A stretch of 64,000 nucleotides of DNA from Obrimoposthia wandeli. Its lineage: Eukaryota. The notes beneath the pieces were generated by a model. That model was given only the letters and a program-made list of their open reading frames with translations, did not search any database and was not told where the DNA came from. The position numbers were made by a program, and so were the translations under genes. This document shows, piece by piece, positions 11,539-45,126 of the stretch; positions within the stretch are counted from its first letter, which is position 1, and the number at the start of each line of letters is the position of its first letter. The stretch covers positions 1,302,001 through 1,366,000 of the forward strand of contig CDROCS010000253.1 of the NCBI GenBank assembly GCA_977020255.1, in the 5' to 3' direction.

Positions 11539-12273
11539 TTACCTAAGCTCTGCGCCTACCAAATGCAGGCAGACTTTTTCAATATCTTCATCGGCAATTT
11601 TTTGTTGCCAGTCGTACGAGTTCACTAAACGCTTCATAGTAAGAATGTGTGCATTATCTGTGGCTAGCACCAGCGATTTATTTTCATTACCTTCATCGGT
11701 ATTTTCATCAAGGCCATTGTGCCAACATTGATGCAAGCGTACCGTTTGAAAGTAACCAACGGATAGCGACCAAGTGCCTAAGTTTATTTCTTCAATATCT
11801 CGGCTACCTGAGATTAATTCACCAGAATCAGCCGCGGTTTGCAAAAGTTGTTGAAACATCGTTTGACATCGTTCTCCGCACGCCTTCATTTGCGTTAACC
11901 AACGCTCCGAGCATCGCTTCATCATCGCCTCGGTATTAACAATACTTTCGAGCTGATTATCAAAGTTATACATTTGAGCTTTAGAAAAATCTAACAAGCT
12001 CGTTGCTAGAATGCGCTCTGGTGTTGTTAAGGGTAAAGCGTGTACTTTTTTGAAAACTGATTGACGCTCTTGATACATGCGAGTAGCTAAGGCAATAAGA
12101 ACATCTTCTTTACATTGTACAAACTTGTAAACGGATCCCATAGACAGACCGGCTAATTTGGCAATAGTTGACATAGAAAAGTCTAATAAACTACTTTCTT
12201 CAATTGCCTTAATTGCCGCACATATGATTAATCTTTCTTGTTCTTCTGCACTAAATCGTGGAGCTGGAGCCAT
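11539..12273 (-). CDS. TetR/AcrR family regulator
   Basis: HTH SMSTIAKLAGLSMGSVYKFVQCKEDVL; co-oriented upstream of MFP-RND. Confidence 0.9.
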   Translation of the reverse strand: MAPAPRFSAEEQERLIICAAIKAIEESSLLDFSMSTIAKLAGLSMGSVYKFVQCKEDVLIALATRMYQERQSVFKKVHALPLTTPERILATSLLDFSKAQMYNFDNQLESIVNTEAMMKRCSERWLTQMKACGERCQTMFQQLLQTAADSGELISGSRDIEEINLGTWSLSVGYFQTVRLHQCWHNGLDENTDEGNENKSLVLATDNAHILTMKRLVNSYDWQQKIADEDIEKVCLHLVGAELR

Positions 12274-13049: not shown

Positions 13050-13442
13050 TTATTTTCGGTTTTGTTTCTTAGTTTCTTTTAGTAAGGCTTCTTCAAATTC
13101 TTCAGGAAATAACACTAAACCTTCATTATCTTGATTCGGAAAAGTAACCAAAGCGAGTTCATCATCAACTAAGCCAGTACTCCAGTGGCTGTACCATTTA
13201 CTTAATGAGATAGCCTCTGCCTTGCAATGTTGCCATTCATCGGTTGCCCAGCGCTGTGCAAACTCTTCGTTTGGCCATACAGGTACGCAATCTTCCTCTT
13301 CAGTATTTAGCATTACACAGCCATGCTCATCAGCTAATATCCAAATTTCTTTGTTGCTAACTACTTGTTGAAGCAAGTAGCTTAAGCGCTTTTCTTCATC
13401 GTATTTTTCTATGGTATTAAGTTGTTCGCTGCTGATTGACAT
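13050..13442 (-). CDS. DUF2750 family protein
   Basis: EIWIL...G, VPVWPNEEFAQRWA, ISLSKW pattern; 130 aa. Confidence 0.75.
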   Translation of the reverse strand: MSISSEQLNTIEKYDEEKRLSYLLQQVVSNKEIWILADEHGCVMLNTEEEDCVPVWPNEEFAQRWATDEWQHCKAEAISLSKWYSHWSTGLVDDELALVTFPNQDNEGLVLFPEEFEEALLKETKKQNRK

Positions 13443-13602: not shown

Positions 13603-13726
13603 CAAAAAAAACCGATAGCAAAGCCATCGGTGAGTTAGCTATGAGGAAAGCTAAAATATTCAATTATTACAACAAGCGTTCGCATTAGGGAACGAGATAA
13701 GTATAGAGTAGATGCTCTATACAGGC
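13603..13726 (-). ncRNA. Candidate orphan small RNA with four hairpins and an intrinsic terminator
   Basis: Minus-strand terminator ACCGAUGGC-UUU-GCUAUCGGU + U8 with no CDS ending upstream; three further hairpins; TACAAT -10 at 13740-13735. Confidence 0.55.
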
Positions 13727-13934
13727 AAGCTTAAATTGTAGTTTTATTTCATTTGTGTTGCTTTATTACATCTATTTTATTCTATATAAATGACTTTTAA
13801 GTGTTTATTGCTGATTTATGACACGTTTGCTTTAGTTAGATCAATAAAAAATCAGTAGGGTATTTGGTGATTTAGCATGCATACAGTAAACTATCGGTAA
13901 TTATAGTTTTAATATTGCTTTAAGTGAAAATATC

Positions 13935-14762
13935 ATGTCTCCCACAGATCAAAATTCTCAAGCCAATGACTTACCAAAAACCCCACAAGCGCCAGTCGAT
14001 GCGGATACTTCAGTTGAGAGTAATAGTACGACGCATTTTGGTTATAAAACCATAGAGAAAGATGACAAAATTTCTATGGTGGCAGGGGTATTTCACTCGG
14101 TTGCTAAGCAATATGATGTGATGAATGATTTAATGTCATTTGGTATTCATCGTTTGTGGAAACGTTTTACTATTGATGCCAGTGGCGTACGTCCAGGTAA
14201 TAAAGTATTGGATCTAGCGGGTGGCACGGGCGATTTAACCGCTAAGTTTTCTAAATTAGTTGGTCGAGAAGGTCAAGTTGTTTTAGCGGACATTAACAGC
14301 TCAATGTTAAATGTCGGTCGTGATAAATTACGTGATAAAGGTTTAGTGCAAAATATAGAATATGTGCAAGCAAATGCTGAATATCTACCTTTTGAAGAGA
14401 ATACTTTTGATATTGTCACCATTGCCTTTGGCTTACGTAATGTAACGGATAAAGATAAAGCCTTGCGCTCAATTTATTCAGTCTTAAAGCCAGGTGGACG
14501 TTTACTTGTTTTAGAGTTTTCAAAACCAGAACATGAGTTATTGAATAAAGCCTATGATTTCTATTCATTCAATATATTGCCTAAAATGGGCGAACTGGTA
14601 GCAAAAGACGGTGAAAGTTATCAATACTTGGCCGAATCAATTCGCATGCACCCTGATCAAGAAACATTAAAAGGTATGATGGAAAATGCCGGCTTTGAAC
14701 AAACGAGTTTTAAAAACTTAACTGGCGGGGTTGTTGCCTTACACAAAGGTTATAAGTTTTAA
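13935..14762 (+). CDS. ubiE: Ubiquinone/menaquinone C-methyltransferase
   Basis: [40 protein letters not shown]. Confidence 0.97.
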
Positions 14763-44090: not shown

Positions 44091-44978
44091 ATGAAGAATT
44101 TTTCCATTGCTATATTATCGCTACTTCTCATTTTAGCTGTATCATCAGTTTTTGTTATTTACGAAGGTCAACGTGGCATCGTATTCCAATTCTCAAAAAT
44201 TAAGCGTGATAGTGCTACTGATGAAATGATGGTGTATGAGCCAGGTTTACATTTCAAGATTCCATTTATTGAGACCGTACGTAAATTAGATGCGCGTATT
44301 CAAACATTAGATGAACCAGCAGATCGATTTGTTACCTCAGAGAAAAAAGATTTAATGGTCGATTCATTTGTGAAATGGCGTATTGTTGATTTCTCTACGT
44401 ATTACTTACGTACTTCAGGCTCTGTAGATAATGCTCGTGCATTATTAAAGCAGAAAGTAAATAACGGCTTGCGTACAGAGTTTGGTAACCGCACCATTAA
44501 AGAAATCGTTTCAGGTGATCGTGATACCATTATGGCGCAAGCATTAGCAAGTGCAAAAAGTAGTCGTGAAGACTTAGGTATTGATGTAGTTGATGTCCGA
44601 ATTAAAGCCATTAATTTACCTACAGAGATAAGTAATTCTATTTATGAGCGTATGCGTGCTGAGCGAACTGCTGTTGCTAAAGAACATAGATCACAAGGTC
44701 AAGAGCAAGCAGAGATTATCCGTGCGACTATTGATGCTAAAGTGACCATAATGTTAGCTGAAGCACAAAAGAACTCTTTTACGGTTCGTGGTGAAGGTGA
44801 TGCACTGGCAGCAAAAGTTTATGCTGATGCTTACAGTAAAGATGCTGATTTCTACAGTTTTTATCGTAGTCTTGAGGCTTATGAAAAAAGCTTTAATAGT
44901 AAAAATGATATTATGGTGGTTAAACCTGATAGCGAATTCTTCCGTTTTTTAAAAGACGGTAGTGATACTAAAAAATAA
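44091..44978 (+). CDS. hflC: FtsH modulator HflC
   Basis: PGLHFKIPF, IYERMRAER, FYSFYRSLEAY. Confidence 0.96.
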   Translation: MKNFSIAILSLLLILAVSSVFVIYEGQRGIVFQFSKIKRDSATDEMMVYEPGLHFKIPFIETVRKLDARIQTLDEPADRFVTSEKKDLMVDSFVKWRIVDFSTYYLRTSGSVDNARALLKQKVNNGLRTEFGNRTIKEIVSGDRDTIMAQALASAKSSREDLGIDVVDVRIKAINLPTEISNSIYERMRAERTAVAKEHRSQGQEQAEIIRATIDAKVTIMLAEAQKNSFTVRGEGDALAAKVYADAYSKDADFYSFYRSLEAYEKSFNSKNDIMVVKPDSEFFRFLKDGSDTKK

Positions 44979-44995
44979 TAATCAGTCATATTAAT

Positions 44996-45023
44996 AAAAG
45001 CCAGCATATTTGCTGGTTTTTTT
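44996..45023 (+). terminator. Terminator after hflC
   Basis: AAAAGCCAGCA-TATT-TGCTGGTTTTTTT. Confidence 0.85.
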
Positions 45024-45126
45024 ATATTTAAAATTCACAATATAAAATTATTCTACATAAAACATCTGAATACATAGCTGTTATTTTGACATGAGCATAT
45101 AGAAATAAAATTGAAAAGGTAATGTA

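What the first reader, a model, noticed from the sequence alone, without database searches (positions are those of the whole stretch)
13603..13740. Orphan four-hairpin sRNA candidate with an exposed anti-Shine-Dalgarno loop
This lies between the 5' ends of DUF2750 and ubiE, so no mRNA should end here. Yet the minus strand has a strong terminator, ACCGAUGGC-UUU-GCUAUCGGU-U8, whose G-U pair works only on that strand. Upstream are three more hairpins: GUAUAGAG/CUCUAUAC (8 bp), CGUUC/GAACG, and UUAGCU-[UUCCUCAU]-AGCUAA, whose loop is complementary to AUGAGGAA-like ribosome-binding sites. An AU-rich single-stranded stretch lies between them, and a TACAAT -10 sits at 13740-13735 with a poor -35. No plausible ORF. 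Known: a U-tail, an AU-rich Hfq site and a C/U-rich seed loop are hallmarks of Hfq-dependent base-pairing sRNAs. Inference: an ~124-nt trans-acting, possibly activator-dependent sRNA that I cannot match to a named family.
Basis: partly seen in the sequence, partly recalled or inferred. Interest (0 to 1): 0.7.

Follow-up and report, generated by a model that had tools for sequence, protein, structure and literature searches.

The report
Colwelliaceae small RNA in Spot 42's slot
This is very probably a real, stand-alone regulatory RNA gene of about 90 bases, conserved across the marine family Colwelliaceae; in most genera it sits just after polA, where E. coli and Vibrio keep Spot 42, so it may be a heavily remodelled version of that RNA.

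Summary
The minus-strand hairpins and terminator are real. The element is one conserved unit in 60+ Colwelliaceae sequences. The terminator covaries strongly, the CGUUC/GRACG hairpin has compensatory changes, and the UAGCU-[UUCCUCAU]-AGCUA hairpin and the 22 nt before it are almost invariant.

The conserved promoter is TTGCCT (13728-13723), a 17-bp spacer and TATACT (13705-13700). The "first hairpin" is therefore promoter DNA, probably an operator dyad (TAGAG-N6-CTCTA). The proposed TACAAT -10 is half of a conserved upstream dyad. The RNA is about 90 nt (about 13694 to 13604) with three hairpins, not about 124 nt with four.

It is not a leader. The downstream gene varies, and in about eleven loci it is convergent.

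No Rfam family matches, Spot_42 included. However, in Thalassotalea, Thalassomonas, Cognaticolwellia and "Colwellia" MEBiC06753 the gene lies right after polA on the same strand, the classical spf position. Only Colwellia proper has it beside ubiE. The E. coli spf promoter shares the upstream dyad at the same place, and Spot 42 shares a 13-nt block and the overall architecture.

Reading: a new sRNA family, about even odds a diverged Spot 42 orthologue. Expression is untested because no RNA data exist.

The parts
13757..13770 (-). Distal conserved promoter block (TGTAATAAAGCAAC), function unknown
   Evidence: Nearly invariant in the 12 synteny-derived Colwellia copies while sequence further upstream diverges. 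A CAAC-like core is also seen in polA-linked relatives and in the E. coli spf promoter alignment.
13737..13751 (-). Upstream 15-bp dyad TG(A/T)AA-N5-(T/C)TACA, about 7-8 bp upstream of the -35. It is a presumed transcription-factor or UP-type site.
   Evidence: Conserved across ubiE-linked and polA-linked copies. It is a perfect palindrome (ATGTAATTTAATTACAT) in many metagenome copies. E. coli spf has TGAAAAAAAATTACA at the same distance from its -35.
13723..13728 (-). -35 hexamer TTGCCT
   Evidence: Found by the promoter scan. TTG is invariant or nearly so in 57 sequences, with no indel between it and the -10.
13704..13719 (-). Dyad TAGAG-N6-CTCTA in the promoter spacer, overlapping the -10.
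   Evidence: The five inner pairs are kept but never covary, and the outer pairs break. The dyad is retained in polA-linked copies and in the diverged paralogues. It occurs once in the window.
13700..13705 (-). -10 hexamer TATACT (TATAAT in many relatives)
   Evidence: A2 and T6 are invariant; variation is at position 5 only.
13677..13694 (-). 5' hairpin CGUUC-[8 nt]-GAACG. The inferred transcription start is at about 13694/13693.
   Evidence: Pair counts are C-G 43 / U-G 8 / U-A 2, G-C 56 / A-U 1, and U-G 42 / U-A 15. Four sequences carry an 11-nt insertion in the loop that extends the helix. The U-G pairs fit this strand only.
13655..13676 (-). Conserved single-stranded AU-rich region (CUUGUUGUAAUAAUUGAAUAUU), the presumed Hfq contact and base-pairing region
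   Evidence: Unpaired in all folds. Nearly invariant in the 12 synteny-derived copies and the 4 polA-linked copies. It overlaps the 13-nt block shared with E. coli Spot 42.
13635..13654 (-). Hairpin UUAGCU-[UUCCUCAU]-AGCUAA with a CU-rich anti-Shine-Dalgarno loop, the presumed seed
   Evidence: The UAGCU/AGCUA stem and the loop are invariant in about 60 sequences, so there is no covariation. The stem is kept in paralogues whose loop is UCCCCAU.
13604..13631 (-). Rho-independent terminator: 9-bp stem, UUU loop, U8 tail
   Evidence: Seven of nine pairs show changes on both sides. 97.4% of cells are paired, against 18-52% when the partners are slid.

Best explanation
Window 13770-13604 (minus strand) is a complete small-RNA gene.

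Anatomy:
- A sigma-70 promoter: -35 TTGCCT at 13728-13723, a 17-bp spacer, and -10 TATACT at 13705-13700.
- Two conserved DNA dyads flank or overlap the promoter. One lies upstream of the -35 (13751-13737). One lies in the spacer and overlaps the -10 (13719-13704).
- The promoter drives an RNA of about 90 nt, starting near 13694/13693 and ending in the U-tract at about 13604.
- The RNA has a short 5' hairpin, a 22-nt invariant AU-rich single strand, a small hairpin displaying UUCCUCAU, and an intrinsic terminator.

Inferred mechanism: a trans-acting, Hfq-type base-pairing RNA. Its single strand and CU-rich loop pair with ribosome-binding regions (AUGAGGAA-like) of target mRNAs and repress translation. 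Its synthesis is controlled by proteins that bind the two dyads.

Evolution: the gene is family-wide in Colwelliaceae. Its older position is immediately downstream of polA on the same strand, the slot of spf (Spot 42) in Enterobacterales and Vibrionaceae. In Colwellia proper it has moved next to ubiE. I read it as the Colwelliaceae counterpart of Spot 42, at about even odds a true, strongly diverged orthologue whose 5' pairing regions have been replaced.

Status of each step:
- Shown: conservation, covariation, promoter geometry, independence from neighbouring genes, and the polA position.
- Inferred: transcription, the 5' end, Hfq dependence, targets, regulators, and orthology with spf.
For: Conservation:
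- Conservation in the intergenic region falls into three blocks. One spans exactly promoter to U-tail, and the flanks diverge.
- 57 distinct copies show TTG and TAnnnT invariant, with no indel between them.

Structure:
- RNAalifold keeps three helices and drops 'hairpin 1'.
- Nine pairs change on both sides, 97.4% of cells are paired, and no shuffle of 500 reaches the observed pairing or covariation score.

Independence from neighbours:
- The gene after the terminator is DUF2750, a NIT-domain chemoreceptor, a TonB/ECF-sigma cassette, a 222-aa gene, or a convergent gene only 31-107 nt away.

Position after polA:
- Model R1 finds full-length copies 150-360 nt after polA in Thalassotalea atypica, Thalassomonas actiniarum, Cognaticolwellia mytili and Colwellia sp. 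MEBiC06753, at 75-93 bits. It also finds one in metagenome contigs L102/L104.
- It finds none after polA in Colwellia sp. C1TZA3.
- The positions of polA and spf in E. coli and Aliivibrio come and PMC3295665.

Links to E. coli spf:
- The E. coli spf promoter aligns with the family promoter at the same register. It falls in the top 0.3-4% of AT-rich windows, and nhmmer gives E = 0.004 within the locus.
- The 13-nt block UGAAUAUUUUAGC is shared.
- Both RNAs have the layout 5' hairpin, single strand, small hairpin, terminator.
Against: - No transcript evidence. No RNA run holds this sequence.
- Rfam Spot_42 gives no hit even at E <= 10.
- The family model scores E. coli spf at only 12.5 bits. That is E = 0.035 within 1.1 kb, and an antisense decoy scores 0.056.
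- Nothing resembles Spot 42's 5' 48-nt hairpin or its SpfP reading frame.
- engB/yihA is not downstream in any Colwelliaceae locus.
- The promoter similarity is in A-rich, low-complexity sequence; nhmmer bias is 8.6.
- The polA-engB region hosts other sRNAs in Vibrio (VSsrna24), so position alone does not prove orthology.
- The seed hairpin shows no covariation.
- 45 of the 57 aligned copies were retrieved with a 27-nt pattern from the core, which inflates the apparent invariance there.
Confidence: 0.55

Rival explanations
1. A genuine stand-alone sRNA of the same anatomy, but unrelated to Spot 42. It would be a Colwelliaceae-specific family that arose in, or moved into, the polA-downstream intergenic region. 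The similarities to spf would be convergence: an AT-rich UP-like promoter element, an Hfq-type AU-rich module, and a chance 13-mer.
For: There is no RF00021 signal. The CM score on E. coli spf is near noise. The 5' half and the loop are unrelated to Spot 42. Vibrios already hold a second sRNA in that region.
Against: Three weak similarities are colinear. The promoter dyad lies at the same distance from the -35, the 13-nt block lies just before the penultimate hairpin, and the architecture is the same. They coincide with the same chromosomal slot and strand.
Confidence: 0.33
2. One reading: an RNA of about 124-130 nt started from TACAAT (13740-13735), with four hairpins including GUAUAGAG/CUCUAUAC.
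For: The hairpin is thermodynamically good in this one sequence, and the long form folds with z = -4.8.
Against: TACAAT is not kept in relatives and has no -35. The hairpin's outer pairs break without compensation, and its 3' arm is a conserved -10 at a fixed 17 bp from a conserved TTG. The consensus fold omits it.
Confidence: 0.05
3. A cis-acting 5' leader or attenuator of the gene downstream on the same strand (DUF2750 here).
For: It lies 160 nt upstream of DUF2750 on the same strand. A terminator preceded by alternative hairpins is the usual attenuator layout.
Against: The downstream gene differs among relatives and is convergent in about eleven loci, while the element stays with ubiE or polA. 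DUF2750 keeps its own conserved 69-nt proximal block. No anti-terminator alternative is conserved.
Confidence: 0.03
4. A very small protein gene, or a dual-function RNA: the 16-codon ORF from AUG 13684 to UAA 13636.
For: The ORF is intact in about half of the copies. E. coli Spot 42 is itself dual-function, encoding SpfP (PMC8916003).
Against: There is no Shine-Dalgarno. 23 of 63 copies lack the AUG, 7 read AUG-UGA, and polA-linked copies carry 1-nt indels inside the ORF.
Confidence: 0.03

Closest known systems
Spot 42 (spf; Rfam RF00021) of Enterobacterales and Vibrionaceae
   Same: - Chromosomal slot in most Colwelliaceae genera: just after polA, on the same strand.
- Own promoter, with a shared TGAAA-N5-TTACA element at the same distance from the -35.
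- Size class: about 90 nt against 109 nt.
- Layout: 5' hairpin, then a single strand containing GUAAU, then a small hairpin, then a terminator.
- A shared block, UGAAUAUUUUAGC.
   Different: - No covariance-model match.
- Spot 42's 48-nt 5' hairpin, with pairing regions I and II and the SpfP frame, is absent.
- The shared block is a hairpin loop in Spot 42. Here it is single strand plus the 5' arm of a new hairpin with a CU-rich loop.
- There is no engB neighbour.
- In Colwellia proper the gene has moved to ubiE.
- CRP control is untested.
Predicted divergent spf homologues of Glaciecola and Pseudoalteromonas (bioRxiv 10.64898/2026.07.10.737749)
   Same: Alteromonadales sRNA candidates that standard sequence and structure searches do not recognise. 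They are assigned through polA/engB synteny.
   Different: That work does not mention Colwelliaceae. None of the motifs of this RNA occur in its held supplementary text. Sequence relatedness could not be tested.
VSsrna24 of Vibrionaceae (second sRNA in the polA-engB region)
   Same: A small RNA encoded downstream of polA.
   Different: It is reported as about 60 nt and limited to Vibrionaceae (PMC3295665).
Generic Hfq-dependent anti-Shine-Dalgarno sRNAs. Weak sub-threshold Rfam matches were MicF, Hrs13, Pseudomonas P26 and Betaproteobacteria toxic sRNA.
   Same: Terminator hairpin with a U-tail, an AU-rich stretch, and a CU-rich loop.
   Different: All matches are far below the gathering scores: 21.6 against 79, 18.4 against 52, 25.1 against 36, and 21.8 against 50. 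They rest on the terminator and loop composition only.

Membership tests
Spot 42 (spf, RF00021) | Match to the Rfam covariance model at the gathering score | tested here: not met
   There is no RF00021 hit at gathering. There is none at E <= 10 on the window locus or on the polA-linked copy L104.
Spot 42 (spf, RF00021) | Gene immediately downstream of polA on the same strand | tested here: met
   Met for the family in L102/L104, L116, L117, L118 and L119. Not met for the window copy itself, which lies upstream of ubiE.
Spot 42 (spf, RF00021) | engB/yihA as the downstream neighbour | tested here: not met
   The downstream genes are patatin, an alpha/beta hydrolase, DUF3754 or Band_7 proteins.
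Spot 42 (spf, RF00021) | Conserved RNA sequence (91 of 109 nt invariant between E. coli and Vibrionaceae, PMC3295665) | tested here: not met
   Only a 13-nt block and GUAAU are shared. The family model scores 12.5 bits on E. coli spf, E = 0.035 within the locus, with an antisense decoy at 0.056. blastn against E. coli genomes finds nothing.
Spot 42 (spf, RF00021) | Promoter region related to the spf promoter | tested here: inconclusive
   The shared dyad lies at the same register. nhmmer gives E = 0.004 within the locus but with high compositional bias. The local alignment falls in the top 0.3-4% of AT-rich windows.
Spot 42 (spf, RF00021) | Repression by cAMP-CRP; Hfq binding | not testable with these tools
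   No expression or binding data exist. No CRP-spaced site was recognised: the dyads are 5-5-5 and 5-6-5 but read TGWAA/TTACA and TAGAG/CTCTA.
Spot 42 (spf, RF00021) | SpfP small ORF | tested here: not met
   There is no equivalent frame. The only small ORF is not conserved.
Stand-alone Hfq-type base-pairing sRNA (class) | Own promoter and own intrinsic terminator, independent of flanking genes | tested here: met
   A conserved -35/-10 at fixed spacing, a covarying terminator, and variable or convergent neighbours.
Stand-alone Hfq-type base-pairing sRNA (class) | Conserved single-stranded seed, plus a U-tail of at least 6 and an AU-rich stretch next to a 3' hairpin | tested here: met
   Note that 45 of the 57 aligned copies were found with a pattern from this very region. 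The 12 synteny-derived and 4 model-derived copies are the unbiased set.
Stand-alone Hfq-type base-pairing sRNA (class) | Discrete transcript; Hfq association; target regulation | not testable with these tools
   No RNA-seq run holds the sequence.
Cis-regulatory leader / attenuator | Constant linkage to the regulated downstream gene | tested here: not met
   At least five different downstream neighbours, several of them convergent.
Repeat element (REP / MITE) | Multiple copies per genome | tested here: not met
   There is one copy in the 64-kb window. Contigs hold one copy, and two contigs hold a second, diverged copy with its own promoter.

The most novel reading that the evidence does not exclude
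This is the true orthologue of spf. The promoter architecture, the Hfq module and the chromosomal slot were retained. The whole 5' targeting half of Spot 42 was replaced by a short hairpin, and a new CU-rich anti-Shine-Dalgarno loop was created. The gene was then relocated to ubiE in Colwellia and duplicated into sibling copies in some lineages. That would be a documented case of a core catabolite-repression sRNA rewiring its seed beyond recognition within the Gammaproteobacteria.
Probability: 0.45. Interest if true: 0.6.

Novelty: new member of a known kind. Interest (0 to 1): 0.45.

Why it matters
No sRNAs have been described for Colwelliaceae, a model group for cold and deep-sea adaptation. 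The literature search found none.

This locus offers a well-defined candidate with exact promoter, start and end predictions, two candidate operator sites, and a nearly invariant 45-nt targeting core. It can be tested directly by Northern blot, 5' RACE, Hfq pull-down and target prediction.

The occupancy of the polA slot also bears on an open practical problem. Spot 42 seems to vanish in Alteromonadales, where covariance models fail. If orthology holds, it shows how far a 'universal' sRNA can drift while keeping its regulatory context. It would also give a model (R1, alignment A5) for annotating the family.

Tried and rejected
- **Rfam.** Nothing at gathering or permissive thresholds on the window and on L104, beyond terminator-driven sub-threshold hits.
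- **Repeat or MITE.** Single copy.
- **Leader of DUF2750.** Rejected by the changing and convergent neighbours.
- **Small ORF.** Not conserved.
- **RNA-seq evidence.** Only four DNA-type runs hold the sequence and none is RNA; contigs cannot show RNA ends.
- **blastn of the RNA against E. coli genomes.** No match.
- **Pairing with the NIT chemoreceptor mRNA.** Duplex prediction between the conserved core and the leaders of the frequently adjacent NIT-chemoreceptor gene gave no consistent site in 12 loci. No window-wide target scan was attempted, because 64 kb is too small a target set.
- **Recent spf-homologue preprint.** Searching its supplements for this RNA's motifs or for Colwelliaceae genera found nothing.
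- **Two Spot 42 structure papers.** Not held in the library, so where Hfq binds on Spot 42 rests on my own recollection.
- **Naming the regulators of the two dyads.** CRP, NsrR, TyrR, ArgR and Fis-type consensus sequences, recalled from memory, do not fit in spacing or bases. No assignment is made.
- **Second copy in the window.** A weak R1 hit at 44938-45026 is simply the terminator of the ORF ending at 44978.
- **Sibling earlier findings in this genome.** They gave no usable detail.

Full report
**Setting.** The finding lies in the 492-bp spacer between two divergent genes. DUF2750 is at 13050-13442 on the minus strand, and ubiE is at 13935-14762 on the plus strand. The scan finds a 9-bp stem at 13631-13611 followed by eight U. 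The 146-nt stretch folds better than all 200 dinucleotide shuffles, z = -4.8. The terminator and the loop hairpin each occur once in the 64-kb window. The spacer holds no notable repeats.

**Conservation.** I fetched loci through the DUF2750 protein. Eleven Colwellia genomes hold the element at 83-91% identity. Conservation in the spacer falls into three blocks: about 100 nt next to ubiE, 69 nt next to DUF2750, and a block that begins about 75 nt upstream of the hairpins and ends at the U-tract. In three genomes about 2.1 kb of other genes is inserted right after the U-tract, and the element stays with ubiE. The insertions are a TonB/ECF-sigma cassette and a NIT-domain chemoreceptor.

A 27-nt degenerate pattern from the core retrieved 56 metagenome contigs. 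Together these give 57 distinct sequences (alignment A2). The pattern forces identity in those 27 columns, so invariance there should be judged on the 12 synteny-derived copies and the later model-derived ones.

**Where the RNA starts.** Three features mark an ordinary sigma-70 promoter.
- TTG at 13728-13726 is invariant or nearly so.
- TAnnnT at 13705-13700 is invariant at positions 2 and 6. It reads TATACT here and TATAAT in many relatives.
- None of the 57 sequences has an indel between the two, although indels are common just outside.

Its three outer pairs are broken without compensation in 40-65% of sequences. The five inner pairs (TAGAG/CTCTA) never vary. RNAalifold on the long version omits it.

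The proposed TACAAT -10 is not kept; relatives have TACAAA, TACAAG or TACATT. It coincides with the right half of a conserved 15-bp dyad, TG(A/T)AA-N5-TTACA, which is a perfect palindrome in many copies.

So transcription most likely starts at about 13694/13693. The RNA is then about 90 nt with three hairpins. The 16-bp dyad TAGAG-N6-CTCTA that overlaps the -10 is best read as an operator, which is an inference.

**Structure.** On 63 model-aligned copies (A5):
- 97.4% of cells form standard pairs, against 18-52% when the partners are slid.
- Nine pairs show changes on both sides.
- No shuffle of 500 reaches the observed pairing or covariation score.
- Seven of the nine terminator pairs covary.

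In the register CGUUC/GRACG, the 5' hairpin shows C-G to U-A and G-C to A-U changes and many U-A/U-G alternations that fit only this strand. Four sequences carry an 11-nt loop insertion that extends the helix. The UAGCU/AGCUA hairpin and its UUCCUCAU loop are invariant, which says nothing either way about pairing. The stem survives in two diverged extra copies whose loop is UCCCCAU. The 22 nt before it are unpaired in every fold.

**Not a leader, repeat or peptide gene.** The gene after the terminator varies. It is DUF2750, the chemoreceptor, the TonB cassette, a 222-aa gene, or, in about eleven loci, a convergent gene 31-107 nt away. The 16-codon ORF from AUG 13684 has no Shine-Dalgarno and is intact in only about half of the copies. 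polA-linked copies have 1-nt indels within it.

**Known families.** No Rfam family reaches its threshold. Permissive searches give only terminator-driven partial matches such as MicF, Hrs13 and P26, and never Spot_42.

**The polA connection.** Two metagenome contigs (L102, L104) lack ubiE. There the element follows the 3' end of polA on the same strand. That polA is 83% identical to the polA of Thalassotalea atypica.

I fetched the polA loci of five named Colwelliaceae and searched them with covariance model R1, built from the RNA-only alignment. The model finds full-length copies 150-360 nt after polA in four of them:

| Organism | Score (bits) |
|---|---|
| Colwellia sp. MEBiC06753 | 92.5 |
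| Cognaticolwellia mytili | 84.2 |
| Thalassotalea atypica | 80.5 |
| Thalassomonas actiniarum | 74.7 |

Colwellia sp. C1TZA3 has none after polA, and its polA spacer holds no remnant. The family is therefore Colwelliaceae-wide. The polA position is shared by four genera, and Colwellia proper has the ubiE position.

In E. coli and Aliivibrio, spf (Spot 42) is the gene right after polA (PMC3295665). A 2026 preprint notes that spf is hard to recognise in Alteromonadales. It predicts divergent homologues in Glaciecola and Pseudoalteromonas by synteny and does not mention Colwelliaceae.

**Is it Spot 42?** Evidence for:
- The chromosomal slot and the strand are the same.
- The E. coli spf promoter has TGAAAAAAAATTACA seven to eight bases upstream of its -35. 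This matches the family dyad in sequence and register. nhmmer gives E = 0.004 within the locus, and the local alignment falls in the top 0.3-4% of AT-rich windows.
- UGAAUAUUUUAGC, preceded by GUAAU, occurs in both RNAs just before the penultimate hairpin.
- Both RNAs fold as 5' hairpin, single strand, small hairpin, terminator.

Evidence against:
- There is no RF00021 signal.
- R1 scores E. coli spf at only 12.5 bits, E = 0.035 within 1.1 kb, and an antisense decoy scores 0.056.
- The 5' half, the SpfP frame and the engB neighbour are all missing.
- The promoter match is in A-rich sequence.
- Vibrios hold a second sRNA, VSsrna24, in the same region.

I put true orthology at about even odds. 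Membership in the Rfam family is not met.

**Mechanism.** The anatomy is that of an Hfq-type base-pairing RNA: a U-tailed terminator, an adjacent small hairpin, an AU-rich single strand, and a CU-rich loop complementary to AUGAGGAA-like ribosome-binding sites. Translational repression of several mRNAs is the likeliest action. Synthesis would be set by proteins that bind the two promoter dyads. None of this could be tested. No RNA run holds the sequence, and a small pairing test against the often-adjacent chemoreceptor leaders was negative.

**Verdict.** This is a real feature, and its anatomy is corrected here. It is a new sRNA family of a familiar kind, with an unexpected and testable link to Spot 42.

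Noticed in passing
L079:5890-5985 (-) and L087:2186-2280 (+): Second, diverged copies of the sRNA on the same contigs as the main copy (68 and 52 bits). They have their own TTTACA/TATAAT promoter and keep the TAGAG-N6-CTCTA dyad. They lack the upstream dyad, and their loop is UCCCCAU instead of UUCCUCAU. They look like sibling sRNAs.
   Followed up: partly
L001:754-2930, L006:826-2930, L014:690-2930 and about 15 metagenome loci: The site right after the sRNA terminator is a hot spot for gene insertion. It holds a TonB-like/ECF-sigma/TonB-like cassette, a 659-665-aa NIT-domain methyl-accepting chemoreceptor, or a 222-aa gene, placed between the sRNA and DUF2750. A NIT chemoreceptor gene also lies about 1.8 kb from the polA-linked copy in Thalassomonas (L117:7461-7739).
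   Followed up: partly
L059, L071, L077, L106 (5' hairpin loop of the sRNA): An 11-nt insertion in the loop of the 5' hairpin is itself partly self-complementary with the loop flank. It lengthens the helix, as happens in structured RNAs.
   Followed up: no
L116:5340-5400: In Thalassotalea atypica, 10 extra bases (one helical turn) sit between the upstream dyad and the -35. This would keep a bound protein on the same face of the DNA.
   Followed up: no
L115:541-555 (E. coli K-12, upstream of spf): The E. coli spf promoter carries TGAAAAAAAATTACA just upstream of its -35. This is distinct from the published CRP site at L115:505-526, and the same element is conserved in Colwelliaceae. I know of no assigned function for it.
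   Followed up: partly
window 11539-12273 (-): A 244-aa ORF two genes from the sRNA has no Pfam match at E <= 0.001. Its N-terminus looks like a helix-turn-helix by eye.
   Followed up: no
window 44938-45026 (+): The best secondary hit of the sRNA model in the window (21.8 bits) is only the intrinsic terminator of the ORF ending at 44978.
   Followed up: yes
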